In this document: positions 27,305 through 46,662 of the stretch, piece after piece
How the letters are laid out: each line of letters starts with the position of its first letter
How positions within the stretch are numbered: the first letter of the stretch is position 1
DNA from: Macrostomum hystrix
Taxonomy: Eukaryota > Animalia > Platyhelminthes
Direction: 5' to 3'
Length of the DNA stretch: 64,000 nt
Assembly (NCBI GenBank): GCA_950097015.1
Contig: CATNEN010000007.1
Coordinates: 7,254,001 to 7,318,000 of the forward strand
Program-made: the position numbers and the translations under genes
Notes under the pieces: model-generated
The model's database searches: none
Told to the model about the DNA's origin: nothing
What the model saw: the letters and a program-made list of their open reading frames with translations, nothing else

Positions 27305-30300
27305 TCACCTGTACTGCGGAAACTGCGCGCCGCCGCTGGCTGGCACCGGCCCCGGCTCGCATTTCTCCCACTCCACGGGAAACTGGGCGGCTGCGACGGC
27401 GGCTGCGGCGGCGGCGTCCGCGTCGTTGCGCGGCAGAATCGGCGGCGGCGGCACCGGCGGCGGCACCTTGTCGATGCTGTGCGACTGGTACTGGGCGGGC
27501 CTCTGGCCGCCCATCACGAGGCCCTGCGTGTTGCATTGGGGGAGATTGGGTTGTTGAGCTCATTTAATTTGTACTCATTGCTAAAGTGCACACGAGCGCC
27601 CGTGTCATTACTCGATCCTCAAAGCGGGCTGGCGGGTCCTTCAGAAAATAGTGCAGCGGAGCGTAGCAGAATGCTATGATGGCGATGGACCACATCATCC
27701 AGCGAAATCCCATCATCCTCACGATGCTGCCGCTCAGCGCTGGGCCTGGTGGATGGTTGAAGATTCGCTTCTAGTTGGACTAAAGATATTTTTGACGCCT
27801 TGACTACTAAGTAGTCCACCAGGATTATCACTCTTGTATAAGTCCCACAACCGCCTCACCCCTACAAACAGCTCGCTACTACAATTATCTCACACCAGCA
27901 CCCACCTCACCCTATACATCCACCTCACTCCCGCAACCACCTCACTCCCGCAACCACCTCACTCTAACACCCATCTCACTCCCACACCCACCTCACTCCC
28001 ACAACCACCCCACTGCAACAACCACCTCACTCACCCACTCCACTCCCTCAACCAGCCTCAATCCAACACCTAACGCTACAATCCCCTCCGCCCCAATACC
28101 CACTTCCCGAAACCCTGCTATCTAATATGCCATCTTTCTGCTAGGCTTATAGTTTCATAGTCTCGCACCGATAGCGAAGCCGAGGCAGAAGGCGATGTCA
28201 GCGATAGCATAGACACTGCCGTAGACAGAGACGTGGCGCAGGTCGACCAGGTAGCCCATGAGCGGCATCATTGAAGAATCCACCATGCCAATCGCGAAGC
28301 CGAGACCGAAGTTCGGCACCACCAGATGGCCCAGCGAGTTCGCGAACGGGATCTGGGGTAGGTAAGGTAAGTAAGTAGTAAGTAAGTAGGTAAGGTCAAA
28401 AAGTTGGTTTGTGCGAAAACAAAACGGATGCTGAATTGCTCGAGTCAAAGGTTTTCAACTCACAATAATTAGACAGAGGCCCATTAAGACCATGCCGAGA
28501 CCGGCACTCAGCCATCTGGAATTTAAGACATCTGGAGTTTTCTCTTGCCTCTTAAAAGAGCTACGTGTTTGTACTCGTACGGAATGAGGTGGCTGTATGG
28601 AGTAAGGTAGTTGCATGGAGTGAGGTGGTTGCATGGAGTGAGGTGGTTGCATGGAGTGGGGTGGTTGCATGGAGTGAGGTGGTTGCATGGAGTGAGGTGG
28701 TTGCATGGAGTGAGGTGGTTGCATGGAGTGGGGTGGTTGCATGGAGTGAGGTGGTTGCATGGAGTGGGGTGGTTGCATGGAGTGAGGTTGTTGCATCGAT
28801 TGCGGTGGTTTTAGTTCGTGTTAAAAGAGGCTGTTTGAACTTGCCTGCCAATCCGGAAGGCCAGTGCACCAAACAGATTGGTGCCAATCAGATAAGAGAT
28901 TGAGCAGGGCAAAAAAGCGACTCCCTGCTCCCAGCGCTGGGCATGCATCGTGTCTTTCATCCAGATGGGCAGTGAGGGCTCCAGCATGGCGATGCCCATG
29001 TTGCCGAAGGTGATGCTGCCGGCGGCAAGCAGAATGTAGGGATCACGCAGAAGATTTTTCAACGGGGCCCCCTCTTGCGCTTCAGGTCGCACACCAGGCT
29101 TTAGCACAAGCAGCTGCAGGACTAAGTGAATTTTTAGAATAGAAAGATTATTTAAATGATAAATTTCTGGTTAACTCAAGCCAGCAATTAGGGTGGAGTA
29201 AAGTTGGTGAGCGGAGTGGGATTGCCGTGTAGTGTGAGGTTGTCGAGCGGAGTGGGGTTGTCGAGCGGAGTGGGGTTGTCGAGCGGAGTGAGGTTGTCGA
29301 GCGGAGTGAGTTTGGTCAGCGAAGTGGCGTTGGCTAGGAAGAGTGAGGTGGACGGAGTGAGATTAGTGTGTTCCAATCATAATACTGCATGTAGGCTCAT
29401 TAGCATAATCAGGGATGACTCACCGCCGTCCAGCAGGGCCAAACCGGCCAGCAGCATAAAGGCGGCCTCCTTGCTCACGAACTGGTACATGACACCGCCG
29501 AATGGAGGGCCGACTGACGGGAGGTGTTTTGGAGAGGCATTCCGGATGTTAGAGACAGTTTGAATTCGTAGTGATGCGCACATTCCCACTTTAAACATTT
29601 AATTGTTAATAGGTTGCAATAGTACAGGTTAGCTTTTTCATGATGCTCGCGCCATCACTAAATACTTAGTCTAATGGCGGAAATTTGACGGCCCGAATAA
29701 TTCTAGGAGTAGATCTAACCAATTTAAATATTTCTAATTTGTTAATTATAACACTAAGAGGTTAGCAAAGCTTGCGTTAGCTTTAAAATATTTTAACAAC
29801 AAGTATAACAAAAATTTGTAACTATTTAGTAGAACAAATAATTGTCAATTATCACTCAGTCGGCCTTCTTGTCTGTCTGTCCTGAGTGTCTGTTCTGAGT
29901 GATTGTCTGTCCTGAGTGTCTGTTCTGAGTGTTTGTCTGTCCTGAGTGTCTGTCTGTCCCGAGTGTCTGTCCTGAGTGTGTCTGTCCTGAGTGTCTGTCT
30001 GTCCTGAGTGTCTGTCTGTCCCGAGTGTCTGTCCTGAGTGTGCCTGTCCTGAGTGTCTGTCTGTCCTAAGTGTCTTTCTGTCCTGAGTATCTGTCTGCCA
30101 TGAGTGTCTGTCCTGAGTGTCTGTCCTGTGTGTCTGTCCTAAGTGTCTGTCCTGAGTGTCTGTCCTGAGTGTCTGTCTGTCCTGAGTGTCTTTCTGTCCT
30201 GAGTATCTGTCTGCCATGAGTGTCTGTCCTGAGTGTCTGTCCTGTGTGTCTGTCCTAAGTGTCTGTCCTGAGTGTCTGTCCTGAGTGTCTGTCTGTCCTG

Positions 30301-33300
30301 AGTGTCTTTCTGTCCTGAGTGTCTGTCTGTCCTGAGTGTCTGTCTGTCCTGAGTGTCTGTCTGTCATGAGTCTCTGTCTGTCCTGAGTGTCTGTCTGTCA
30401 TGAGTGTCTGTCTGTCATGAGTGTCTGTCTGTCATGAGTGTCTGTCTGTCATGAGTCTCTGTCTGTCATGAGTGTCTGTCTGTCATGAGTGTCTGTCTGT
30501 CATGAGTATCTGTCCTGAGTGTCTGTCATGAGTGTCTGTCTGTCCTGAGTGTCTGTCCTGAGTGTCTGTCATGAGTGTCTGTATGTCCTGAGTGTCTGTC
30601 ATGAGTGTCTGTATGTCCTGAGTGTCTGTCCCGTGTGTCTGTCCTGAAGCGCCTGTCTGTCTGTCTGTCTCACCAAGCACTCCCATTGCCAGTCCGCCCA
30701 AAGCCAGGCTCATAGCCTGGCCTCTCTCCTTGTCGTCCGGATATTGTGTGGCCAGCATGCCAAGGCCTGAATTGAAAAATGTGGCAGAGAGACTGACTCA
30801 GGCAGCTGAACAGATCAGAAAGCTTGCATTCTGAAATCAAACAGGCTTCTGACAACGGCAAAAAATTAATTTAAAGACAAAAATGGCAAGGAAACCAAAT
30901 TAAACAGGAAAGTAAACTAAATTGTTTAAACTTAAACTTATGTCCTATTAGGCAAGATGCTGAAAGTGGTTGCCAAACGTTTGCGTAAAATCAGCGTTCC
31001 TCACTTAAAATCAGTTGGCTACTAGTCCACTCTCTCGTGTTAATTTTTCTTCTCTGTTATTCAGACTCAACAGAAGTAGATCTGTCATTTTAGATTCTCG
31101 TAGTTACACCGAACGCTCATAAGTCTAATATAATCCAATTAGGGTCAAAGTAAAGGCGTACTCAAGGTGAAATAATGCATGCCAATAAAATTCCTACGAA
31201 CGGAACTTAAACAGTGCAACAAAAGACCAACGTAAGATAAGGAACAGTGAAAGACACTGGAAAAGTGACCAAAGAAACAATATTGCCGTCTGATCAGTCA
31301 GCACCCATGACTCCGAAGGCCAGACCGCTGAGTGCAATGCCTAGAGCGCGGCCGCGTTCCACGTCATCTGTGTAGATTGCCGCCACCATGCCCATGCCTT
31401 CGGTTTGGCGAGCGGAGTGGAGTGAGGTGAGGTTGGTGAGCGGAGTGAGGTTGGCGAGCGGAGTGAGGTTGGCGAGGGGAGTGAAGTTGGTGTGTAGAGT
31501 GAGGTTGGCGAGCGGAGTGAGGTTGGTGTGTAGAGTGAGGTTAGTGAATAAAGTAGAGTTGGGAAGAAATAGTTTTTGCTTGAGTAAGGTTAGATGGAGT
31601 TCTTATGTTTGTAGATATAATGGTGCCGCATAGTGTTGCGATACGCAGCACCTTGACGTACCATTTCTCGGTCGACGATTCCTAGACTAAGCTGCTAAAC
31701 GATATTGTTTCATTAAAAAAATGCTTTGAAGTGTCATCTTTGATGAAAAAAAACAAACTCAGAAAATTTTAATTACAATACGACATTCGCAAAAAAGAAG
31801 CGTCTTGCACTGCAGAGATTCTCAATTCGAGCTAATTTACCAAAAATTGCTCACCCGACACACTGGAGCAGGCAGACCCGATGCCCTGGATGGCCCGGGC
31901 AACAAACAGGACGCCGTAGGATTCGCCGAACGCAAAAACTGGAACAAGCGGATTGGAGATTATTGAATCTGAACCCCTTACACACTCAATAAACACAAGT
32001 CAATTTATCACCTCGACTCGACGACTTCTCTTGACTAAAAATATCCCATTGACTTAAAAAATCTCATTCTCTTGAAAATATCGTATTGACTTAAAAAGAT
32101 CGCATTGACTTGAAAATATCCCATTGACTTGGCATGGCTACTCACTGATGGTTGAGACGAACATGATGACGAAGCCGGAGAACATGGGAATCGAGTAGCC
32201 AATCCTGTTCGTCAGCGGCCCCACAAAGGGATTTACGATCAATTGCATCACCGACTTGGCAGCGAACATCACGCCGACGTGGATGTTCATCTCCACCAGC
32301 TGCTCGTGGCGCCAGCTGTCGGCCTTGGCGAAGCAGTCGCGAATCTCCGACTTGTTCAGCCTGATCTCGTCGACGTGTTCGACAAAGAAACGATCGGCGT
32401 GCAGACTGGGCAGGCGGCCGTAGAACCGCCCATCCCTGCCGCCGCCCTCGCCGCCGCCTCTGCCGAAGTCCTCAGCGTGAGCCTTCTGCCCCAGACGGGC
32501 CGCCTCGGCCACCCAGCGGGCGAACTGCTCCGTCGAGTTGTCGAACAGGTGCGAGTGCCGCGCCGCGATCGTCTCATTCTTGGCCAGCTGAATACAATCG
32601 GCCGTGTAGTTGTAGTCCCGGTGGCGGATGTACCAAAGAAAGTCCGGGATGATGGGCACTGTGGGATCAGAGTGTTTGGGATGGTTAGCACTGTGGGATC
32701 AGAGAGTGTGGGATGGCTAGCACTGTGGGATCAGAGAGTGTTTGGGATGGCTATCACTGTGGGATCAGAGTGTTTGGGATGGCTATCATTGTGGGATCAG
32801 AGAGTGTGGGATGGCTAGCACTGTGGGATCAGAGAGTGTTTGGGATGGTTAGCACTGTGGGATCAGAGAGTGTTTGGGATGGTTAGCACTGTGGGATCAG
32901 AGAGTGTTTGGGATGATTAGCACTGTGGGATCAGAGAGTGTTTGGGATGGTTAGCATTGTGAGATCAGAGAGTGTGGGATGGTTATCACTGTGGGATCAG
33001 AGAGTGTTTGGGATGGCTAGCACTGTGGGATCAGAGAGTGTTTGGGATGGCTAGCACTGTGGGATCAGAGAGTGTTTGGGATGGTTAGCACTGTGGGATC
33101 AGAGAGTGTTTGGGATGGCTATCACTGTGGAATCAGAGAGTGTGGGATGGCTATCACTGTGGGATCAGAGAGTGTTTGGGATGGCTATCACTGTGGAATC
33201 AGAGAGTGTTTGGGATGATTAGCACTGTGGGATCAGAGAGTGTTTGGGATGGCTATCATTGTGGAATCAGAGAGTGTGGGATGGCTAGCACTGTGGGATC

Positions 33301-36300
33301 AGAGAGTGTTTGGGATGGCTAGCACTGTGGGATCAGAGAGTGTTTGGGATGGTTAGCACTGTGGGATCAGAGAGTGTTTGGGATGGCTAGCACTGTGGGA
33401 TCAGAGAGTGTGGGATGGTTAGCACTGTGGGATCAGAGAGTGTGGGATGATTAGCACTGTGGGATCAGAGAGTGTGGGATGATTAGCACTGTGGGATCAG
33501 AGAGTGTGGGATGGCTAGCACTGTGGGATCAGAGAGTGTTTGGGATGGCTAGCACTGTGGGATCAGAGAGTGTGGGATGATTAGCACTGTGGGATCAGAG
33601 AGTGTGGGATGATTAGCACTGTGGGATCAGAGAGTGTGGGATGATTAGCACTGTGGGATCAGAGAGTGTGGGATGATTAGCACTGTGGGATCAGAGAGTG
33701 TTTGGGATGGTTAGCATTGTGGGATCAGAGAGTGTTTGGGATGATTAGCACTGTGGGGTCAGAGAGTGTTTGGGATGATTAGCACTGTGGGGTCAGAGAG
33801 TGTGGGATGGTTAGCACTGTGGGGTCAGAGAGTGTTTGGGATGGTTAGCACTGTGGGGTCAGAGAGTGTTTGGGATGGTTAGCACTGTGGGATCAGAGAG
33901 TGTGGGATGGTTAGCATTGTGGGGTCAGAGAGTGTGGGATGGTTAGCATTGTGGGATCAGAGAGTGTTTGGGATGATTAGCACTGTGGGGTCAGAGAGTG
34001 TTTGGGATGATTAGCACTGTGGGGTCAGAGAGTGTGGGATGGTTAGCACTGTGGGGTCAGAGAGTGTTTGGGATGATTAGCACTGTGGGGTCAGAGAGTG
34101 TGGGATGATTAGCACTTTGGGGTCAGAGAGTGTTTGGGATGATTAGCACTGTGGGATCAGAGAGTTTGGGATGATTAGCACTGTGGGGTCAGAGAGTGTT
34201 TGGGATGGTTAGCATTGTGGGATCAGAGAGTGTTTGGGATGATTAGCACTGTGGGATCAGAGAGTGTTTGGGATGATTAGCACTGTGGGATCAGAGAGTT
34301 TGGGATGGTTAGCACTGTGGGATCAGAGATTGTTTGGGATGGTTAGCATTGTGGGATCAGAGAGTGTTTGGGATGGCTATCACTGTGGGATCAGAGAGTG
34401 TTTGGGATGGCTATCACTGTGGGATCAGAGAGTGTTTGGGATGGTTAGCACTGTGGGATCAGAGAGTGTTTGGGATGGTTAGCACTGTGGGATCAGAGAG
34501 TGTTTGGGATGGCTATCACTGTGGGATCAGAGAGTGTTTGGGATGGTTAGCATTGTGGGATCAGAGAGTGTTTGGGATGATTAGCACTGTGGGATCAGAG
34601 AGTGTTTGGGATGGCTATCACTGTGGGATCAGAGAGTGTTTGGGATGGCTAGCACTGTGGGATCAGAGAGTGTTTGGGATGGCTATCACTGTGGGATCAG
34701 AGAGTGTTTGGGATGGCTATCACTGTGGGATCAGAGAGTGTTTGGGATGGTTAGCACTGTGGGATCAGAGAGTGTTTGGGATGGCTATCACTGTGGGATC
34801 AGAGAGTGTTTGGGATGGCTATCACTGTGGGATCAGAGAGTGTTTGGGATGGCTATCACTGTGGGATCAGAGAGTGTTTGGGATGGCTATCACTGTGGGA
34901 TCAGAGAGTGTTTGGGATGGCTATCACTGTGGGATCAGAGAGTGTTTGGGATGGCTAGCACTGTGGGATCAGAGAGTGTTTGGGATGGCTATCACTGTGG
35001 GATCAGAGAGTGTTTGGGATGGTTAGCACTGTGGGGTCAGAGAGTGTTTGGGATGATTAGCACTGTGGGGTCAGAGAGTGTTTGGGATGGCTATCACTGT
35101 GGGGTCAGAGAGTGTTTGGGATGGTTAGCACTGTGGGGTCAGAGAGTGTTTGGGATGGTTAGCACTGTGGGGTCAGAGAGTGTTTGGGATGGTTAGCACT
35201 GTGGGGTCAGAGAGTGTTTGGGATGATTAGCACTGTGGGATCAGAGAGTTTGGGATGGTTAGCATTGTGGGATCAGAGAGTGTTTGGGATGATTAGCACT
35301 GTGGGGTCAGAGAGTGTTTGGGATGGTTAGCATTGTGGGGTCAGAGAGTGTGGGATGGCTATCACTGTGGGATCAGAGAGTGTTTGGGATGGTTAGCATT
35401 GTGGGATCAGAGAGTGTTTGGGATGGTTAGCACTGTGGGGTCAGAGAGTGTTTGGGATGGTTAGCACTGTGGGGTCAGAGAGTGTTTGGGATGGTTAGCA
35501 TTGTGGGATCAGAGAGTGTGGGATGGTTAGCATTGTGGGATCAGAGAGTGTTTGGGATGATTAGCACTGTGGGGTCAGAGAGTGTTTGGGATGATTAGCA
35601 CTGTGGGGTCAGAGAGTTTGGGATGGTTAGCACTGTGGGATCAGAGAGTGTTTGGGATGGTTAGCATTGTGGGATCAGAGAGTGTTTGGGATGGTTAGCA
35701 TTGTGGGGTCAGAGAGTGTTTGGGATGGTTAGCACTGTGGGATCAGAGAGTGTGGGATGGTTAGCATTGTGGGATCAGAGAGTGTTTGGGATGATTAGCA
35801 CTGTGGGGTCAGAGAGTGTTTGGGATGATTAGCACTGTGGGGTCAGAGAGAGTTTGGGATGGTTAGCACTGTGGGATCAGAGAGAGTTTGGGATGGTTAG
35901 CACTGTGGGGTCAGAGAGTGTTTGGGATGGTTAGCATTGTGGGATCAGAGAGTGTTTGGGATGGTTAGCATTGTGGGGTCAGAGAGTGTTTGGGATGGTT
36001 AGCACTGTGGGATCAGAGAGTGTGGGATGGTTAGCATTGTGGGATCAGAGAGTGTTTGGGATGATTAGCACTGTGGGGTCAGAGAGTGTTTGGGATGGTT
36101 AGCACTGTGGGGTCAGAGAGTGTTTGGGATGATTAGCACTGTGGAATCAGAGAGTGTTTGGGATGGTTAGCACTGTGGGATCAGAGAGTGTTTGGGATGG
36201 TTAGCACTGTGGGGTCAGAGAGTGTGGGATGGTTAGCACTGTGGGGTCAGAGAGTGTTTGGGATGATTAGCACTGTGGGGTCAGAGAGTGTGGGATGATT

Positions 36301-39300
36301 AGCACTTTGGGGTCAGAGAGTGTTTGGGATGATTAGCACTGTGGGATCAGAGAGTTTGGGATGATTAGCACTGTGGGGTCAGAGAGTGTTTGGGATGGTT
36401 AGCATTGTGGGATCAGAGAGTGTTTGGGATGATTAGCACTGTGGGATCAGAGAGTGTTTGGGATGATTAGCACTGTGGGATCAGAGAGTTTGGGATGGTT
36501 AGCACTGTGGGATCAGAGATTGTTTGGGATGGTTAGCATTGTGGGATCAGAGAGTGTTTGGGATGGCTATCACTGTGGGATCAGAGAGTGTTTGGGATGG
36601 CTATCACTGTGGGATCAGAGAGTGTTTGGGATGGTTAGCACTGTGGGATCAGAGAGTGTTTGGGATGGTTAGCACTGTGGGATCAGAGAGTGTTTGGGAT
36701 GGCTATCACTGTGGGATCAGAGAGTGTTTGGGATGGTTAGCATTGTGGGATCAGAGAGTGTTTGGGATGATTAGCACTGTGGGATCAGAGAGTGTTTGGG
36801 ATGGCTATCACTGTGGGATCAGAGAGTGTTTGGGATGGCTAGCACTGTGGGATCAGAGAGTGTTTGGGATGGCTATCACTGTGGGATCAGAGAGTGTTTG
36901 GGATGGCTATCACTGTGGGATCAGAGAGTGTTTGGGATGGTTAGCACTGTGGGATCAGAGAGTGTTTGGGATGGCTATCACTGTGGGATCAGAGAGTGTT
37001 TGGGATGGCTATCACTGTGGGATCAGAGAGTGTTTGGGATGGCTATCACTGTGGGATCAGAGAGTGTTTGGGATGGCTATCACTGTGGGATCAGAGAGTG
37101 TTTGGGATGGCTATCACTGTGGGATCAGAGAGTGTTTGGGATGGCTAGCACTGTGGGATCAGAGAGTGTTTGGGATGGCTATCACTGTGGGATCAGAGAG
37201 TGTTTGGGATGGTTAGCACTGTGGGGTCAGAGAGTGTTTGGGATGATTAGCACTGTGGGGTCAGAGAGTGTTTGGGATGGCTATCACTGTGGGGTCAGAG
37301 AGTGTTTGGGATGGTTAGCACTGTGGGGTCAGAGAGTGTTTGGGATGGTTAGCACTGTGGGGTCAGAGAGTGTTTGGGATGGTTAGCACTGTGGGGTCAG
37401 AGAGTGTTTGGGATGATTAGCACTGTGGGATCAGAGAGTTTAGGATGGTTAGCATTGTGGGATCAGAGAGTGTTTGGGATGATTAGCACTGTGGGGTCAG
37501 AGAGTGTTTGGGATGGTTAGCATTGTGGGGTCAGAGAGTGTGGGATGGCTATCACTGTGGGATCAGAGAGTGTTTGGGATGGTTAGCATTGTGGGATCAG
37601 AGAGTGTTTGGGATGGTTAGCACTGTGGGGTCAGAGAGTGTTTGGGATGGTTAGCACTGTGGGGTCAGAGAGTGTTTGGGATGGTTAGCATTGTGGGATC
37701 AGAGAGTGTGGGATGGTTAGCATTGTGGGATCAGAGAGTGTTTGGGATGATTAGCACTGTGGGGTCAGAGAGTGTTTGGGATGATTAGCACTGTGGGGTC
37801 AGAGAGTTTGGGATGGTTAGCACTGTGGGATCAGAGAGTGTTTGGGATGGTTAGCATTGTGGGATCAGAGAGTGTTTGGGATGGTTAGCATTGTGGGGTC
37901 AGAGAGTGTTTGGGATGGTTAGCACTGTGGGATCAGAGAGTGTGGGATGGTTAGCATTGTGGGATCAGAGAGTGTTTGGGATGATTAGCACTGTGGGGTC
38001 AGAGAGTGTTTGGGATGATTAGCACTGTGGGGTCAGAGAGAGTTTGGGATGGTTAGCACTGTGGGATCAGAGAGAGTTTGGGATGGTTAGCACTGTGGGG
38101 TCAGAGAGTGTTTGGGATGGTTAGCATTGTGGGATCAGAGAGTGTTTGGGATGGTTAGCATTGTGGGGTCAGAGAGTGTTTGGGATGGTTAGCACTGTGG
38201 GATCAGAGAGTGTGGGATGGTTAGCATTGTGGGATCAGAGAGTGTTTGGGATGATTAGCACTGTGGGGTCAGAGAGTGTTTGGGATGGTTAGCACTGTGG
38301 GGTCAGAGAGTGTTTGGGATGATTAGCACTGTGGAATCAGAGAGTGTTTGGGATGGTTAGCACTGTGGGATCAGAGAGTGTTTGGGATGGTTAGCACTGT
38401 GGGGTCAGAGAGTGTTTGGGATGGTTAGCACTGTGGGGTCAGAGAGTGTTTGGGATGGTTAGCACTGTGGGGTCAGAGAGTGTTTGGGATGATTAGCACT
38501 GTGGGGTCAGAGAGTTTGGGATGGTTAGCACTGTGGGATCAGAGAGTGTTTGGGATGGTTAGCATTGTGGGATCAGAGAGTGTTTGGGATGGTTAGCACT
38601 GTGGGGTCAGAGAGTGTTTGGGATGATTAGCACTGTGGGGTCAGAGAGAGTTTGGGATGGTTAGCACTGTGGGATCAGAGAGAGTTTGGGATGGTTAGCA
38701 CTGTGGGGTCAGAGAGTGTTTGGGATGGTTAGCACTGTGGGGTCAGAGAGTGTTTGGGATGGTTAGCACTGTGGGGTCAGAGAGTGTTTGGGATGATTAG
38801 CACTGTGGGGTCAGAGAGTTTGGGATGGTTAGCACTGTGGGATCAGAGAGTGTTTGGGATGGTTAGCATTGTGGGATCAGAGAGTGTTTGGGATGGTTAG
38901 CATTGTGGGGTCAGAGAGTGTTTGGGATGGTTAGCACTGTGGGGTCAGAGAGTGTTTGGGATGGTTAGCACTGTGGGGTCAGAGAGTGTTTGGGATGGTT
39001 AGCACTGTGGGGTCAGAGAGTGTTTGGGATGGTTAGCACTGTGGGATCAGAGAGTGTTTGGGATGGTTAGCACTGTGGGATCAGAGAGTGTGGGATGGTT
39101 AGCATTGTGGGATCAGAGAGTGTTTGGGATGATTAGCACTGTGGGGTCAGAGAGTGTTTGGGATGATTAGCACTGTGGGGTCAGAGAGTGTTTGGGATGA
39201 TTAGCACTGTGGGGTCAGAGAGTGTGGGATGATTAGCACTGTGGGGTCAGAGAGTGTGGGATGGTTAGCACTGTGGGGTCAGAGAGTGTTTGGGATGATT

Positions 39301-42300
39301 AGCACTGTGGGGTCAGAGAGTGTGGGATGATTAGCACTGTGGGTTCAGAGAGTGTTTGGGATGGTTAGCACTGTGGGGTCAGAGAGTGTGGGATGGTTAG
39401 CACTGTGGGGTCAGAGAGTGTTTGGGATGGTTAGCACTGTGGGATCAGAGAGTGTTTGGGATGATTAGCACTGTGGGATCAGAGAGTTTGGGATGATTAG
39501 CACTGTGGGGTCAGAGAGTGTTTGGGATGATTAGCACTGTGGGGTCAGAGAGTGTTTGGGATGGCTATCACTGTGGGGTCAGAGAGTGTTTGGGATGGTT
39601 AGCACTGTGGGGTCAGAGAGTGTTTGGGATGGTTAGCACTGTGGGGTCAGAGAGTATTTGGGATGGTTAGCATTGTCGGATAAGAGAGTGTTTGGGATGG
39701 CTATCACTGTGGGGTCAGAGAGTGTTTGGGATGATTAGCACTGTGGGATCAGAGAGTTTGGGATGGTTAGCATTGTGGGATCAGAGAGTGTTTGGGATGA
39801 TTAGCACTGTGGGATCAGAGAGTGTTTGGGATGGCTATCACTGTGGGATCAGAGAGTGTTTGGGATGGTTAGCACTGTGGGGTCAGAGAGTGTGGGATGG
39901 TTAGCACTGTGGGGTCAGAGAGTGTTTGGGATGATTAGCACTGTGGGGTCAGAGAGTGTGGGATGATTAGCACTGTGGGTTCAGAGAGTGTTTGGGATGG
40001 TTAGCACTGTGGGGTCAGAGAGTGTGGGATGGTTAGCACTGTGGGGTCAGAGAGTGTTTGGGATGGTTAGCACTGTGGGATCAGAGAGTGTTTGGGATGA
40101 TTAGCACTGTGGGATCAGAGAGTTTGGGATGATTAGCACTGTGGGGTCAGAGAGTGTTTGGGATGATTAGCACTGTGGGGTCAGAGAGTGTTTGGGATGG
40201 CTATCACTGTGGGGTCAGAGAGTGTTTGGGATGGTTAGCATTGTGGGGTCAGAGAGTGTTTGGGATGGTTAGCACTGTGGGGTCAGAGAGTGTTTGGGAT
40301 GGTTAGCACTGTGGGGTCAGAGAGTATTTGGGATGGTTAGCATTGTCGGATAAGAGAGTGTTTGGGATGGCTATCACTGTGGGGTCAGAGAGTGTTTGGG
40401 ATGATTAGCACTGTGGGATCAGAGAGTTTGGGATGGTTAGCATTGTGGGATCAGAGAGTGTTTGGGATGATTAGCACTGTGGGATCAGAGAGTGTTTGGG
40501 ATGGCTATCACTGTGGGATCAGAGAGTGTTTGGGATGGTTAGCACTGTGGGGTCAGAGAGTGTTTGGGATGATTAGCACTGTGGGGTCAGAGAGTGTTTG
40601 GGATGGCTATCACTGTGGGGTCAGAGAGTGTTTGGGATGGTTAGCACTGTGGGGTCAGAGAGTGTTTGGGATGGTTAGCACTGTGGGGTCAGAGAGTGTT
40701 TGGGATGGTTAGCACTGTGGGGTCAGAGAGTGTTTGGGATGATTAGCACTGTGGGATCAGAGAGTTTGGGATGGTTAGCATTGTGGGATCAGAGAGTGTT
40801 TGGGATGATTAGCACTGTGGGGTCAGAGAGTGTTTGGGATGGTTAGCATTGTGGGGTCAGAGAGTGTGGGATGGCTATCACTGTGGGATCAGAGAGTGTT
40901 TGGGATGGTTAGCATTGTGGGATCAGAGAGTGTTTGGGATGGTTAGCACTGTGGGGTCAGAGAGTGTTTGGGATGGTTAGCACTGTGGGGTCAGAGAGTG
41001 TTTGGGATGGTTAGCATTGTGGGATCAGAGAGTGTGGGATGGTTAGCATTGTGGGATCAGAGAGTGTTTGGGATGATTAGCACTGTGGGGTCAGAGAGTG
41101 TTTGGGATGATTAGCACTGTGGGATCAGAGAGTGTTTGGGATGGTTAGCATTGTGGGATCAGAGAGTGTTTGGGATGGTTAGCATTGTGGGGTCAGAGAG
41201 TGTTTGGGATGGTTAGCACTGTGGGATCAGAGAGTGTGGGATGGTTAGCATTGTGGGATCAGAGAGTGTTTGGGATGATTAGCACTGTGGGGTCAGAGAG
41301 TGTTTGGGATGATTAGCACTGTGGGGTCAGAGAGAGTTTGGGATGGTTAGCACTGTGGGATCAGAGAGTGTTTGGGATGGTTAGCATTGTGGGGTCAGAG
41401 AGTGTTTGGGATGGTTAGCATTGTGGGATCAGAGAGTGTTTGCGATGGTTAGCACTGTGGGGTCAGAGAGTGTTTGGGATGGTTAGCACTGTGGGGTCAG
41501 AGAGTGTTTGGGATGATTAGCACTGTGGGGTCAGAGAGTGTTTGGGATGGCTATCACTGTGGGGTCAGAGAGTGTTTGGGATGGTTAGCACTGTGGGGTC
41601 AGAGAGTGTTTGGGATGGTTAGCACTGTGGGGTCAGAGAGTGTTTGGGATGGTTAGCACTGTGGGGTCAGAGAGTGTTTGGGATGATTAGCACTGTGGGA
41701 TCAGAGAGAGTTTGGGATGGTTATCACTGTGGGGTCAGAGAGTGTTTGGGATGGTTAGCATTGTGGGGTCAGAGAGTGTTTGGGATGATTAGCACTGTGG
41801 GATCAGAGAGTTTGGGATGATTAGCACTGTGGGGTCAGAGAGTGTTTGGGATGGTTAGCATTGTGGGATCAGAGAGTGTTTGGGATGGTTAGCACTGTGG
41901 GATCAGAGAGTGTTTGGGATGATTAGCACTGTGGGATCAGAGAGTTTGGGATGGTTAGCACTGTTGGATCAGAGAGTGTTTGGGATGGTTAGCATTGTGG
42001 GATCAGAGAGTGTTTGGGATGGCTATCACTGTGGGATCAGAGAGTGTTTGGGATGGCTATCACTGTGGGATCAGAGAGTGTTTGGGATGGTTAGCACTGT
42101 GGGATCAGAGAGTGTTTGGGATGGTTAGCACTGTGGGATCAGAGAGTGTTTGGGATGGCTATCACTGTGGGATCAGAGAGTGTTTGGGATGGTTAGCATT
42201 GTGGGATCAGAGAGTGTTTGGGATGATTAGCACTGTGGGATCAGAGAGTGTTTGGGATGGCTATCACTGTGGGGTCAGAGAGTGTGGGATGGTTAGCACT

Positions 42301-45300
42301 GTGGGGTCAGAGAGTGTTTGGGATGATTAGCTCTGTGGGATCAGAGAGTGTTTGGGATGGTTAGCACTGTGGGATCAGAGAGTGTTTGGGATGGTTAGCA
42401 TTGTGGGATCAGAGAGTGTTTGGGATGATTAGCACTGTGGGATCAGAGAGTGTGGGATGGCTAGCACTGTGGGGTCAGAGAGTGTGGGATGGTTAGCACT
42501 GTGGGATCAGAGAGTGTTTGGGATGGTTAGCACTGTGGGATCAGAGAGTGTTTGGGATGGTTAGCATTGTGGGATCAGAGAGTGTTTGGGATGGTTAGCA
42601 CTGTGGGGTCAGAGAGTGTTTGGGATGGTTAGCACTGTGGGGTCAGAGAGTGTTTGGGATGGTTAGCACTGTGGGGTCAGAGAGTGTGGGATGGTTAGCA
42701 CTGTGGGGTCAGAGAGTGTTTGGGATGGTTAGCACTGTGGGATCAGAGAGTGTTTGGGATGGTTAGCATTGTGGGATCAGAGAGTGTTTGGGATGATTAG
42801 CACTGTGGGATCAGAGAGTGTGGGATGGCTAGCACTGTGGGGTCAGAGAGTGTGGGATGGTTAGCACTGTGGGATCAGAGAGTGTTTGGGATGGTTAGCA
42901 CTGTGGGATCAGAGAGTGTTTGGGATGGTTAGCATTGTGGGATCAGAGAGTGTTTGGGATGGTTAGCACTGTGTGGTCAGAGAGTGTTTGGGATGGTTAG
43001 CACTGTGGGGTCGGAGAGTGTTTGGGATGGTTAGCACTGTGGGGTCAGAGAGTGTGGGATGGTTAGCACTGTGGGGTCAGAGAGTGTTTGGGATGGTTAG
43101 CACTGTGGGATCAGAGAGTGTTTGGGATGATTAGCACTGTGGGGTGAGAGAGTGTTTGGGATGGTTAGCACTGTGGGATCAGAGAGTGTTTGGGATGGTT
43201 AGCATTGTGGGATCAGAGAGTGATTGGGATGGTTAGCACTGTGGGATCAGAGAGTGTTTGGGATGGTTAGCACTGTGGGATCAGAGAGTGTTTGGGATGG
43301 TTAGCACTGTGGGATCAGAGAGTGTTTGGGATGGTTAGCATTGTGGGATCAGAGAGTGATTGGGATGGTTAGCACTGTGGGATCAGAGAGTGTTTGGGAT
43401 GGTTAGCATTGTGGGATCAGAGAGTGATTGGGATGGTTAGCACTGTGGGATCAGAGAGTTTGGGATGATGGGGACTGTGGGATCAGAGAGTGATTGGGAT
43501 GGTTAGCACTGTGGGATCAGAGAGTGTGTGGGATGTAAAATGATTTTAATTCCTACGCAAATATATTAAGCTTCTGTTCTGTATTGAGTTCTGAGCCTCT
43601 TTATCCTGCTCAGTATTTTTTGCTGTCATACGCCTGATATGAAGCCACCGGCCTCCCAGTACCAGCTCCCTCCTTTGTTAGGAAGCTTGCCACTGCTCAG
43701 TCTACTATTTTGAGCAATCACTGCTCAAAAGGAAATGATGCAGGAAGTTGTCCATAGGCTCAGAGCACAGGCTGAGAGCAAGCTGAGCTGGCAGAGCTCC
43801 TTGGGGCTGCCATCTCCAGCAATGTCCGCGACTTTACCATCTACTCGTGAAATTCCCTTATGGCTGCTCTGCCTGGTAGTGATGACTGCGCTGCAGTTAC
43901 TTTTGTGATTTCTAAAGCAATGCCCGCTTGCCACTGAATGTGGAGTGCAGCTCAGGGCCTGAGACAGGGACTGGGATTTGAGGCTTAGACATGAAACTGG
44001 GATATGAGACTCGGATATGAGACTCGGATATGAGTCTGGGATAGGAGTCTGGGATAGGAGTCTGGGTGGGATATGAGACTGGGTGGGATATGAGACTGGG
44101 TGGGATATGAGACTGGGGTATGAGACTCGGATATGAGTCTGGGATATGAGTCTGGGTGGGATATGAGTCTGGGTGGGATATGAGACTGGGGTATGAGACT
44201 CGGATATGAGTCTGGGATATGAGTCTGGGTGGGATATGAGACTGGGTGGGATATGAGTCTGGGTGGGATATGAGTCTGGGTGGGATATGAGACTGGGTGG
44301 GATATGAGACTGGGTGGGATATGAGTCTGGGTGGGATATGAGTCTGGGTGGGATATGAGACTGGGTGGGATATGAGACTGGGTGGGATATGAGTCTGGGT
44401 GGGATATGAGACTGGGTGGGATATGAGTCTGGGTGGGATATGAGTCTGGGTGGGATATGAGACTGGGTGGGATATGAGTCTGGGTGGGATATGAGTCTGG
44501 GTGGGATATGAGACTGGGTGGGATATGAGTCTGGGTGGGATATGAGACTGGGTGGGATATGAGTCTGGGTGGGATATGAGACTCGGATATGAGTCTGGGA
44601 TATGAGTCTGGGTGGGATATGAGACTGGGGTATGAGACTCGGATATGAGTCTGGGATATGAGTCTGGGTGGGATATGAGACTGGGTGGGATATGAGTCTG
44701 GGTGGGATATGAGTCTGGGTGGGATATGAGACTGGGTGGGATATGAGTCTGGGTGGGATATGAGACTCGGATATGAGTCTGGGATATGAGTCTGGGTGGG
44801 ATATGAGACTGGGAGATGAGACTGGGATATGAGACTGGGATATGAGTCTGGGTGGGATATGAGACTGGGATATGAGACTGGGTGGGATATGAGTCTGGGT
44901 GGGATATGAGACTGGGTGGGATATGAGACTGGTTGGGATATGAGTCTGGGTGGGATATGAGACTCGGATATGAGTCTGGGATATGAGTCTGGGTGGGATA
45001 TGAGACTCGGATATGAGACTCGGATATGAGTCTGGGATAGGAGTCTGGGTGGGATATGAGACTGGGATATGAGACTCGGATATGAGTCTGGGATAGGAGT
45101 CTGGGATATGAGACTGGGATATGAGACTGGGATATGAGTCTGGGTGGGATATGAGACTGGGATATGAGACTCGGATATGAGTCTGGGATATGAGTCTGGG
45201 TGGGATATGAGACTGGGTGGGATATGAGTCTGGGTGGGATATGAGACTCGGATATGAGTCTGGGATATGAGTCTGGGTGGGATATGAGACTGGGATATGA

Positions 45301-46662
45301 GACTGGGATATGAGACTGGGATATGAGTCTGGGTGGGATATGAGACTGGGATATGAGACTGGGTGGGATATGAGACTCGGATATGAGTCTGGGATATGAG
45401 TCTGGGTGGGATATGAGACTGGGATGTGAGACTGGGATATGAGACTGGGATATGAGTCTGGGTGGGATATGAGACTGGGATATGAGACTGGGTGGGATAT
45501 GAGACTGGGTGGGATATGAGACTGGGTGGGATATGAGACTGGGTGGGATATGAGTCTGGGTGGGATATGAGACTCGGATATGAGTCTGGGATAGGAGTCT
45601 GGGATATGAGACTGGGATATGAGACTGGGATATGAGTCTGGGTGGGATATGAGACTGGGATATGAGACTCGGATATGAATCTGGGATATGAGTCTGGGTG
45701 GGATATGAGACTGGGTGGGATATGAGTCTGGGTGGGATATGAGACTCGGATATGAGTCTGGGATATGAGTCTGGGTGGGATATGAGACTGGGATATGAGA
45801 CTCGGATATGAGACTGGGATATGAGACTGGGATATGAGACTGGGATATGAGACTGGGATATGAGACTGGGATATGAGACTGAGATATGAGACTGGGATAT
45901 GAGACTGAGACTGGAACTGGGATATGAGACTGAGATATGAGACTGGGATATGAGACTGGGATATGAGACTGAGACTGGAACTGGGATATGAGACTGAGAT
46001 ATGAGACTGGGATTTGAGACTGGGATATGAGACTGGGATATGAGACTGAGATATGAGACTGGGATATGAGACTGGGATATGAGACTGGGATATGAGACTG
46101 GGATATGAGACTGGGATATGAGACTGGGATATGAGACTGGGATATGAGACTGAGATATGAGACTGGGATATGAGACTGAGACTGGAACTGGGATATGAGA
46201 CTGAGATATGAGACTGGGATATGAGACTGGGATATGAGACTGAGACTGGAACTGGGATATGAGACTGAGATATGAGACTGGGATTTGAGACTGGGATATG
46301 AGACTGGGATATGAGACTGAGATATGAGACTGGGATATGAGACTGGGATATGAGACTGGGATATGAGACTGGGATATGAGACTGGGATATGAGACTGGGA
46401 TATGAGACTGGGATTATGAGACTGGGATATGAGACTGGGATATGAGACTGGGATATGAGACCGGTGGTACCGGTGTGAGCAGGCACACTGGCTCACCAAC
46501 AGTGGTGAGCAGCATGTTGTCCAGGAACAGCGCAATGAACACGATGAGCAGGATGAGTTTCCTGGAGTTGCGCATGCCGGTCATGTTGTCGAATGCATTC
46601 TGGGCCCGCTCCAGGCAGCCCAGCTTTGTCTCCTTGCCGTCCTGGAAATCGCTGTAGCCCAT
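27305..46662 (-). CDS. VMAT: Vesicular monoamine transporter (SLC18A1/2-type MFS transporter), ~603 aa with one of the two alternative TM5 exons
   Basis: Exons 5'->3': 46662-46497, 32658-32146, 31938-31855, [31397-31305 or 30766-30674], 29513-29424, 29121-28845, 28515-28464, 28352-28169, 27745-27612, 27523-27305. All are phase-compatible. Motifs: [114 protein letters not shown]. These are VMAT rather than VAChT signatures. Confidence 0.95.
27895..28050. repeat. Degenerate 18-nt repeat CGCAACCACCTCACTCCC (inverted member of the GGAGTGAGGT family)
   Basis: Lies in VMAT intron 27746-28168. Confidence 0.85.
28585..28795. repeat. 18-nt repeat GGAGTGAGGTGGTTGCAT
   Basis: About 11 copies in VMAT intron 28516-28844. 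Confidence 0.95.
29203..29365. repeat. 18-nt repeat GAGCGGAGTG(A/G)GGTTGTC
   Basis: Lies in VMAT intron 29122-29423. Confidence 0.9.
29870..30670. repeat. TGTC-based minisatellite (TGTCTGTC(C/A)TGAGTGTC, 13-17-nt units)
   Basis: Begins immediately at the donor of VMAT exon A; similar to the array at 5127-5475. Confidence 0.95.
30674..30766 (-). CDS. VMAT: VMAT alternative exon A ([31 protein letters not shown])
   Basis: 93 nt, phase 1-1, acceptor ttttcaattcAG|GC and donor G|GTGAGA. Confidence 0.9.
31305..31397 (-). CDS. VMAT: VMAT alternative exon B ([31 protein letters not shown])
   Basis: 93 nt, phase 1-1, acceptor ccgAAG|GC and donor G|GTGCTG. Paralogous to exon 30674-30766. Absent from the ORF track. 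Confidence 0.8.
31404..31545. repeat. 18-nt repeat GAGCGGAGTGAGGTTGGC
   Basis: Abuts the acceptor of VMAT exon B. Confidence 0.9.
32646..43535. repeat. ~10.9-kb satellite, 32/34-nt unit GGGATGGTTAGCACTGTGGGATCAGAGAGTGTTT (about 320-330 copies), overlapping the acceptor of VMAT coding exon 2
   Basis: Read directly. It contains 2190-nt and ~670-nt higher-order duplications. Confidence 0.98.
43990..46460. repeat. ~2.5-kb satellite of 13/17-nt units GGGATATGAG(A/T)CT(GGGT)
   Basis: Lies in the first coding-region intron of VMAT. Source of the 936- and 833-aa pseudo-ORFs. Confidence 0.97.

What the first reader, a model, noticed from the sequence alone, without database searches (positions are those of the whole stretch)
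30674..31397. VMAT carries a tandemly duplicated, probably mutually exclusive exon pair for the TM4-TM5 loop and TM5
Seen: two 93-nt, phase 1-1 exons separated by a 538-nt intron. B (31397-31305) encodes [31 protein letters not shown] and A (30766-30674) encodes [31 protein letters not shown]. Each fits between ..SSVS and VGPPFGG. They share 18/31 residues, and 10 of those 18 codons differ synonymously with no stop or indel, which points to an old duplication with both copies under purifying selection. Known: TM5 lines the SLC18 substrate cavity, and including both exons would add an extra helix and break the 12-TM MFS topology. The VMAT splicing I know of (e.g. Drosophila DVMAT-A/B) is C-terminal, not in the transport core. 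Inference: one gene makes two transporters that may differ in amine preference or drug sensitivity. From memory, the RALG..FG pattern of exon B resembles VAChT, while exon A keeps the VMAT-type GGLAMGVL. Exon B has weaker sites (AAG acceptor, GTGCTG donor), so it may be the regulated, cell-type-specific form.
Basis: partly seen in the sequence, partly recalled or inferred. Interest (0 to 1): 0.88.

Follow-up and report, generated by a model that had tools for sequence, protein, structure and literature searches.

The report
Flatworm VMAT gene: two alternative TM5 exons
A Macrostomum flatworm's only vesicular monoamine transporter gene has two old, well-preserved copies of the 93-base exon for its fifth membrane helix, and RNA shows each copy joined to the exon before it, so the gene probably makes two versions of the transporter core, though a complete second version has not been seen.

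Summary
On the minus strand, exon B (31397-31305) and exon A (30766-30674) are both 93 nt and phase 1-1, and lie 538 nt apart. Each aligns to human VMAT2 residues 204-233 (E about 1e-7). They share 62% of bases and 18/31 residues, with dS about 1.3 and dN/dS about 0.3.

The genome's size and contig count match the Macrostomum hystrix assembly. The M. lignano orthologue carries exon A.

Exon B has been kept by selection. It retains every near-invariant VMAT residue, and none of 5000 simulated neutral-drift copies came near its score on a VMAT profile.

RNA contigs show exon 3 joined to A with B skipped, and, in another run, exon 3 joined to B at its AAG acceptor. Both contigs then run on into the next intron. 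So use of B's weak GTGCTG donor, and true mutual exclusivity, are not shown.

No B-type protein turned up in the databases. No docking or selector pairing was found.

The isoforms would differ at cytosolic-gate positions 204 and 221 and at TM5 positions 226, 230 and 233.

Verdict: a probable two-exon alternative cassette in a transporter core, a new variant of a known kind, and only partly proven. The scan holds many mutually-exclusive-exon notes for this genome; the only one on VMAT is this same finding.

The parts
27305..46662 (-). Coding part of the VMAT (SLC18A1/2-type) gene: ten exon positions, 603 aa when one of A or B is used. E1 46662-46497, E2 32658-32146, E3 31938-31855, B or A, E5 29513-29424, E6 29121-28845, E7 28515-28464, E8 28352-28169, E9 27745-27612, E10 27523-27305.
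   Evidence: tblastn of the M. lignano, Haliotis and Lamellibrachia VMATs on the window. Exon-by-exon frames and splice sites. PDB matches to VMAT2.
31855..31938 (-). Constitutive exon 3 (..[27 protein letters not shown]+G), donor GTGAGC. It is the shared upstream partner of both alternative exons.
   Evidence: RNA contigs join 31855 to 30766 (X3) and 31855 to 31397 (X1). X3 also joins it to the end of exon 2.
31305..31397 (-). Exon B: 93 nt, phase 1-1, acceptor AAG, donor GTGCTG. Encodes the VMAT2 203-233 equivalent with M204, L221, S226, F230 and M233.
   Evidence: Acceptor use shown by the X1 contig. Donor use not shown.
30767..31304 (-). 538-nt intron between B and A. It has an in-frame TGA 9 nt after B's donor (read-through gives ..GVMGAD*) and no similarity to the other introns.
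   Evidence: (the X1 contig covers 31304-31220).
30674..30766 (-). Exon A: 93 nt, phase 1-1, acceptor TTCAG, donor GTGAGA. This is the default form, identical in all 31 residues to the M. lignano VMAT protein.
   Evidence: The X3 contig joins exon 3 to A and skips B.
29424..29513 (-). Constitutive exon 5 (V)[29 protein letters not shown]: the second half of TM5 (the GP..GG part of the antiporter motif), the turn and TM6. It is the expected downstream partner of A or B.
   Evidence: The junction to A is inferred from the M. lignano protein; no RNA junction was seen here, because this exon lay outside the stretch laid.
31427..31562 (-). 18-nt-period C-rich minisatellite (..CCTCACTCCGCTCGCCAA.. 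on the RNA strand) ending about 30 nt upstream of exon B's acceptor. It supplies B's only pyrimidine-rich tract.
   Evidence: A role in regulation is only conjecture.
29870..30647 (-). About 780 nt of 13/17-nt tandem repeat (GACAGACAGACACTCAG-like on the RNA strand) starting 26 nt after exon A's donor.
   Evidence: The X3 contig runs from exon A into it.

Best explanation
The single VMAT gene of this Macrostomum genome (its size and contig count match the M. hystrix assembly) underwent an ancient tandem duplication of the 93-nt exon that encodes the end of TM4, the cytoplasmic loop and the first two thirds of TM5. Both copies have stayed under purifying selection as VMAT coding sequence. Exon A, with strong splice sites, is the default. 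Exon B, with an AAG acceptor and a GTGCTG donor, is a minor, probably regulated alternative that replaces A. The result would be a second full-length 12-TM transporter differing at 13 of 31 residues.

The differences include a swap at two cytosolic-gate methionine positions (204: L in A, M in B; 221: M in A, L in B) and TM5 changes at 226 (G/S), 230 (M/F) and 233 (L/M). The pocket residue V232 and gate residue R217 are unchanged.

Shown: the duplication, its age, selection on B, exon 3 joined to B and exon 3 joined to A (skipping B) in RNA. Inferred: B joined to exon 5, mutual exclusivity, and any functional difference. A change in gating kinetics or drug sensitivity looks more likely than a change of substrate class.
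For: Anatomy: same length, same phase, and homology that ends exactly at the splice sites.

Both exons align to VMAT2 204-233 at E about 1e-7.

Selection on B: dN/dS 0.30 with dS 1.33. B scores 62.5 bits on a profile of 92 distinct VMAT segments, against 67.2 for A. Of 5000 copies of A drifted neutrally to the same divergence, none exceeded 34.4 bits, 0.08% kept 17/30 or more residues, and 58% acquired a stop. B keeps all 18 near-invariant family positions, and keeps ancestral M204, T212, G222 and I223 where A has changed.

RNA: a 260-nt contig in run X1 joins 31855 to 31397 across a GT..AG intron. A 1045-nt contig in X3 joins exon 2, exon 3 and exon A, skipping B.

Read-through past the donor also occurs at the undoubtedly functional exon A in X3, so the same read-through at B is not evidence against use of B's donor.

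Gate and pocket roles of M204, R217, M221 and V232 come from PMC10959523. Their partners Y418 and Y422 sit in constitutive exon 8.

Other notes from this scan report several exon cassettes of this kind in the same genome (unchecked).
Against: No read or contig shows B's donor in use. The only B contig continues 85 nt into the intron, where a stop follows after three codons.

B's donor GTGCTG is the weakest in the gene and B has its only AAG acceptor.

No B-type protein was found. A search with the B reading frame was blank, though it sees only proteins of 56-178 aa. A search with the M. lignano protein region found only A-type Macrostomum models.

93 nt is a multiple of 3, so neither co-inclusion nor double skipping would be removed by frameshift and NMD, and no RNA pairing that could enforce exclusivity was found above shuffled controls.

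Confidence: 0.6

Rival explanations
1. Exon B is used as an unproductive or terminal exon. Its acceptor is used, but the weak donor is mostly not spliced, so the mRNA reads ..GVMGAD-stop. That yields a 5-TM fragment or an NMD target, which would lower VMAT output rather than make a second transporter.
For: The X1 contig runs from B straight through the donor for 85 nt. There is a TGA 9 nt after the donor. The donor is the weakest in the gene. No B-containing full-length protein was found in the databases.
Against: A stop-delivering exon needs no conserved coding sequence. Yet B keeps every near-invariant VMAT residue along its whole length, including the 3' TM5 half, and keeps the exact length, phase and a GT at the homologous position. 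The control exon A shows the same read-through in X3, so such contigs reflect unspliced RNA in these libraries.
Confidence: 0.17
2. Exon B was a working alternative exon for most of its history but is now a relic in this lineage. The observed exon 3-to-B junction would then be splicing noise at a decaying site.
For: Weak acceptor and donor. A single low-depth contig (depth 6) in one run. M. lignano gene models use only A. The comparison between the two copies cannot date when constraint ended.
Against: The frame is intact and there are no radical changes at invariant positions. A noise acceptor would be an odd coincidence at exactly the homologous boundary. The B contig reached assembly depth in a whole-animal library although VMAT is a gene of few neurons.
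Confidence: 0.17
3. A and B are included together, giving a protein with a tandemly repeated loop and TM5 (31 extra residues, 13 helices).
For: Co-inclusion stays in frame (93 nt). The 538-nt intron between them is long enough to be spliced. No exclusivity mechanism was found.
Against: The X3 transcript with A skips B. An odd extra helix would invert the C-terminal half of an MFS transporter. No such protein was found among 560 hits. The one model with an internal repeat, from Popillia, is an exact-copy artefact.
Confidence: 0.04

Closest known systems
Mutually exclusive exon pairs made by tandem exon duplication in membrane transport proteins (for example the alternative segment exons of voltage-gated Na+/Ca2+ channels; general knowledge)
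   Same: Two adjacent homologous exons of equal length and phase that encode one transmembrane segment. One has strong sites and the other weak sites. The duplication is old and both copies are preserved.
   Different: Here the onward junction of the second exon and the exclusivity are unproven. The pair preserves the reading frame whether both are included or both skipped. No enforcing mechanism (short intron, U12/U2 incompatibility, RNA pairing) was found.
Drosophila DVMAT-A / DVMAT-B (PMC2570955, listed)
   Same: One invertebrate VMAT gene gives two proteins by alternative splicing, used in different cell types.
   Different: The Drosophila isoforms differ in the cytoplasmic C-terminal trafficking domain and leave the transport core unchanged. 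Here the alternative part is TM4-end/loop/TM5, which carries cytosolic-gate and pocket residues.
Vertebrate VMAT1 / VMAT2 paralogues (structures 8tgg, 8ucj and others; PMC10959523)
   Same: Two VMAT cores whose pharmacology differs partly through TM5; V232L contributes to tetrabenazine selectivity.
   Different: The vertebrate pair are separate genes that differ throughout. Here only 13 residues differ within one gene, and position 232 is Val in both forms.
Dscam1-type docking-site/selector exon clusters, reported by other agents of this scan for other genes of this genome (unchecked)
   Same: Tandem homologous alternative exons in the same Macrostomum genome.
   Different: No intron-intron complementarity above dinucleotide-shuffled controls was found around the VMAT pair.

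Membership tests
SLC18 vesicular monoamine transporter (VMAT1/2 type) | Sequence orthology to VMATs along the whole protein, closer than to VAChT | tested here: met
Every exon hits VMAT proteins. The M. lignano orthologue P0284 totals 1157 bits, against 732 bits or less for all others. Exon 8 scores 98-100 bits against VMAT2 and 53-54 against VAChT.
SLC18 vesicular monoamine transporter (VMAT1/2 type) | Charged and polar residues of the substrate/proton site (D33, N34, D399, D426) and cytosolic gate residues (R217, Y418, Y422) | tested here: met
   Alignments to human VMAT2 numbering (D33, N34; D399, Y418, Y422, D426; R217 in both A and B). E312 and K138 were not checked individually.
SLC18 vesicular monoamine transporter (VMAT1/2 type) | Monoamine/H+ antiport activity, reserpine sensitivity | not testable with these tools
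   Needs an uptake assay.
Mutually exclusive exon (MXE) pair | Adjacent homologous exons of the same length and reading phase that encode the same protein segment | tested here: met
Mutually exclusive exon (MXE) pair | Each exon is spliced to the common upstream exon | tested here: met
   31855 to 30766 (X3) and 31855 to 31397 (X1), both across GT..AG introns.
Mutually exclusive exon (MXE) pair | Each exon is spliced to the common downstream exon | tested here: inconclusive
   Both contigs run into the following intron, and exon 5 lay outside the stretch laid. A-to-exon 5 is supported only by the M. lignano protein. B-to-exon 5 has no support.
Mutually exclusive exon (MXE) pair | Transcripts carry one and only one of the pair | tested here: inconclusive
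   A-containing RNA skips B. Whether B-containing RNA skips A is unknown. One M. lignano model (P0297) lacks the exon altogether, probably a prediction quirk.
Mutually exclusive exon (MXE) pair | Both copies conserved in related species | not testable with these tools
Only a within-genome test of selection was possible.
Docking-site/selector (competing RNA pairing) MXE control | An intronic element complementary to a sequence next to each alternative exon | tested here: not met
   The best ungapped pairings between the three introns score at or below dinucleotide shuffles. Only 12-14-nt chance-level inverted repeats were found.

The most novel reading that the evidence does not exclude
One flatworm VMAT gene makes two full-length transporters that differ only in the TM4-end/loop/TM5 cassette. 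The cassette swaps the cytosolic-gate methionines (204, 221) and gives B two VAChT-like TM5 residues (L221, F230). The pair would be conserved across Macrostomum and used in different aminergic cell classes, with different loading kinetics, amine preference or drug sensitivity. That would be a case of core-swapping alternative splicing in the SLC18 family, for which the papers searched held no precedent.
Probability: 0.35. Interest if true: 0.65.

Novelty: new variant of a known kind. Interest (0 to 1): 0.5.

Why it matters
VMAT sets how much serotonin, dopamine, octopamine or histamine goes into each vesicle, and it is a major drug target. Known VMAT diversity comes from gene duplication (VMAT1/2) or from C-terminal trafficking variants (Drosophila). 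A natural cassette that changes only 13 residues around the cytosolic gate and TM5 would be a ready-made structure-function experiment on gating and on the TM5 antiporter motif. It would also show that an animal with a single VMAT gene can still tune vesicle loading by cell type. Finally, it adds a neuronal transporter to the exon cassettes this scan keeps noting in Macrostomum.

Tried and rejected
(1) The look-up of encoding contigs for the M. lignano gene locus was closed, so B's presence in a second species is untested.

(2) The search for homologous proteins with the 102-aa open frame around B (region 60-102) returned no candidate. That search sees only proteins of 56-178 aa, so it is weak evidence.

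(3) The same tool with M. lignano P0295, region 83-188, found only the A-type M. lignano cluster among flatworms of that genus. Its four members carry A or lack the exon.

(4) The search of protein representatives with exon 2 found no close relative; the best hits covered only TM2-TM3.

(5) Popillia japonica P0178 scored high because of exact internal repeats. It is a model or assembly artefact, not an exon pair.

(6) Isoforms of Lineus, Macrobrachium and others do not differ in TM5.

(7) Docking/selector search: the repeat finder (one search was a strand slip), an RNAduplex scan that timed out, and an ungapped pairing scan against shuffles. Nothing rose above chance.

(8) Run X2 laid nothing on the stretch.

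(9) The idea that B is VAChT-derived is rejected. B is 66% identical to many VMATs and 50% identical to the genome's VAChT-like genes.

All searches were exon by exon.

(12) The long tandem repeat after exon A was deliberately left out of the read laying stretch, so exon 5 junctions could not be seen.

Full report
**What is there.**

On the minus strand the window carries a complete SLC18 VMAT gene. I defined it exon by exon from tblastn of invertebrate VMATs and from the splice-site context.
- E1 46662-46497
- E2 32658-32146
- E3 31938-31855
- exon B 31397-31305
- exon A 30766-30674
- E5 29513-29424
- E6 29121-28845 (GC-AG intron)
- E7 28515-28464
- E8 28352-28169
- E9 27745-27612
- E10 27523-27305

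With one of A or B the coding length is 1812 nt, or 603 aa.

Single exons align to human VMAT2 with D33/N34 and with D399, Y418, Y422 and D426 in place. They score far better against VMAT2 than against VAChT.

Every search was made exon by exon, by reference.

**Whose genome.**

G000 has 220,453,370 bases in 42 contigs. The published Macrostomum hystrix assembly is described as about 220 Mb in 42 contigs (PMC10468722).

The best protein match by a wide margin is M. lignano PAA57588 (P0284). It scores 1157 summed bits, against 732 or less for all others. Its conserved exons are about 90-97% identical to the window's. Other notes from this scan also call this genome Macrostomum.

**The observation.**

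- There are two 93-nt exons, both phase 1-1, separated by 538 nt.
- The peptides read as given.
- 58/93 bases are identical, as are 17/30 full codons (18/31 counting the split Gly).
- Ten identical residues are encoded by different codons.
- There is no stop and no indel. dN is 0.40, dS is 1.33 and dN/dS is 0.30.

Similarity stops exactly at the AG and GT; the flanking introns are unrelated. Both exons align end to end with human VMAT2 residues 204-233 at E about 1e-7. There is no third copy in the window. Elsewhere in the genome only two intronless VAChT-like genes give weak hits.

**Is exon B under selection?**

I built a profile from 92 distinct 30-residue segments of non-Macrostomum VMATs. 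On it, A scores 67.2 bits and B scores 62.5.

I then drifted copies of A neutrally until they reached the observed 35/90 differences, 5000 times.
- Mean score was 2.8 bits and the maximum was 34.4.
- 58% picked up a stop codon.
- Only 0.08% kept 17 or more identical residues.

So B has been kept as VMAT coding sequence for at least most of its history.

Column by column, B has the family residue at all 18 near-invariant positions: G203, G205, M206, A208, Y211, D213, D214, E216, R217, G218, A220, A224, L225, G227, L228, A229, G231 and V232. B also keeps ancestral M204, G222 and I223 where A has L, S and L. B therefore does not descend from the present form of A.

B is unusual at 207 (V), 215 (V), 221 (L; Met in 93% of the family), 230 (F) and 233 (M). 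Trematode VMATs mix A-like (MLAT.YPDDKER) and B-like (R.A[FL]..ALSGLA) features. That fits a duplication within flatworms, but it does not date the event.

**RNA.**

Only three runs held words of the stretch. I had one read-laying run and used it on 30660-31960, leaving out the 780-nt tandem repeat after exon A.
- Run X3 (0-1 mismatches) has a 1045-nt contig that joins the end of exon 2 to exon 3, then joins 31855 to 30766. Exon A is used and B is skipped. The contig then runs past A's donor into the intron.
- Run X1 (about 98% identical) has a 260-nt contig, depth 6. It joins 31855 to 31397 across a GT..AG intron, so B's AAG acceptor is really used. It then runs past B's donor for 85 nt, to 31220.

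Reading through B's donor gives ..GVMGAD and then a TGA.

The same read-through occurs at exon A, which is certainly spliced onward: the M. lignano protein joins A to VGPPFGG. Such contigs therefore reflect unspliced RNA in these libraries and do not count against B's donor. Equally, nothing shows that B's donor is used.

**Databases.**

A search with the open frame around B was blank, but it can only see proteins of 56-178 aa. A search with the M. lignano protein restricted to E3-A-E5 found only one Macrostomum cluster. Its four members carry A or lack the exon.

The key comparative test, whether B is present and constrained in M. lignano or M. cliftonense, therefore remains open.

**Mechanism of choice.**

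B has the only AAG acceptor among ten acceptors, and the weakest donor (GTGCTG) in the gene. That fits A as the default and B as a minor form needing activation.

Including both exons or skipping both keeps the frame, so NMD cannot enforce exclusivity. The 538-nt intron rules out steric exclusion. I found no intron-intron complementarity above shuffled controls, unlike the docking-selector arrangements that other agents reported for other genes of this genome (unchecked).

An 18-nt C-rich minisatellite ends about 30 nt before B's acceptor. Whether it matters is conjecture.

**What the two forms would change.**

In human VMAT2, R217 with Y418 and M221 with Y422 form the cytosolic gate, M204 probably contributes, and V232 lines the tetrabenazine pocket (PMC10959523).

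| Position (human VMAT2 numbering) | A | B |
|---|---|---|
| 204 | L | M |
| 217 | R | R |
| 219 | Q | R |
| 221 | M | L |
| 222 | S | G |
| 226 | G | S |
| 230 | M | F |
| 232 | V | V |
| 233 | L | M |

L221 and F230 are the residues found at those positions in this genome's two VAChT-like genes. Overall B is a VMAT-type segment.

I infer that any functional difference lies in gate stability or kinetics, or in drug sensitivity, rather than in substrate class. This is untested.

**Known or new.**

Full-text searches gave nothing relevant for VMAT with mutually exclusive exons, tandem exon duplication, or splice variants in flatworms. The known Drosophila DVMAT-A/B isoforms differ at the C-terminus (PMC2570955).

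Among 224 VMAT proteins collected here, isoforms of the same species did not differ in TM5. That is not an exhaustive test.

Tandem-duplicated alternative exons for transmembrane segments are a well-known device. This is therefore a new variant of a known kind, not a new kind.

**Verdict.**

| Reading | Probability |
|---|---|
| B is a working alternative to A that yields a second full-length VMAT | about 0.6 |
| B is an unproductive exon | about 0.17 |
| B is a recently retired relic | about 0.17 |
| A and B are co-included | about 0.04 |

Noticed in passing
window 32656-43535 and 43969-46461 (intron 1 of the VMAT gene): Intron 1 is almost entirely tandem repeat: about 324 copies of a 34-nt unit (93% matches), followed by about 2.5 kb of a 13/17-nt repeat. 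The 34-nt unit ends in the same ..CCCACAG|TGC as the real exon 2 acceptor at 32659/32658, as the other first-reader note (s1-840148) says.
   Followed up: partly
window 27843-28070, 28581-28810, 29195-29349, 31427-31562: One 18-nt-period C-rich minisatellite family (core CCTCACTCC on the RNA strand) sits in four different introns of the same gene. One copy lies directly upstream of exon B.
   Followed up: partly
window 28843-28844: The intron after exon 6 has a GC donor (AG|GCAAGT), a GC-AG intron. The M. lignano protein supports this junction.
   Followed up: partly
G000:C1:16783615-16783698 (L003) and G000:C25:9230473-9230556 (L004): Two intronless SLC18 genes with open frames of 563 and 588 aa and VAChT-type TM5 (LAMIADR[YF]T.E.ERT..LGIALAFISFG). 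The genome seems to have two VAChT-like genes and one VMAT.
   Followed up: partly
window 30601-30673 (via the X3 contig): The RNA contig with exon A continues into the repeat-filled intron instead of joining exon 5. This suggests slow or inefficient removal of that 1160-nt intron in the sampled library.
   Followed up: no
proteins P0296, P0297 (M. lignano, UniRef models): Two M. lignano VMAT models retain 27 residues between exons 2 and 3, and one of them lacks the TM5 exon altogether. These are probably prediction quirks, but a double-skip transcript is not excluded.
   Followed up: no
protein P0178 (Popillia japonica): This beetle VMAT model has exact internal repeats of the TM4-TM5 region. 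It looks like an assembly or annotation artefact, not an alternative-exon pair.
   Followed up: yes
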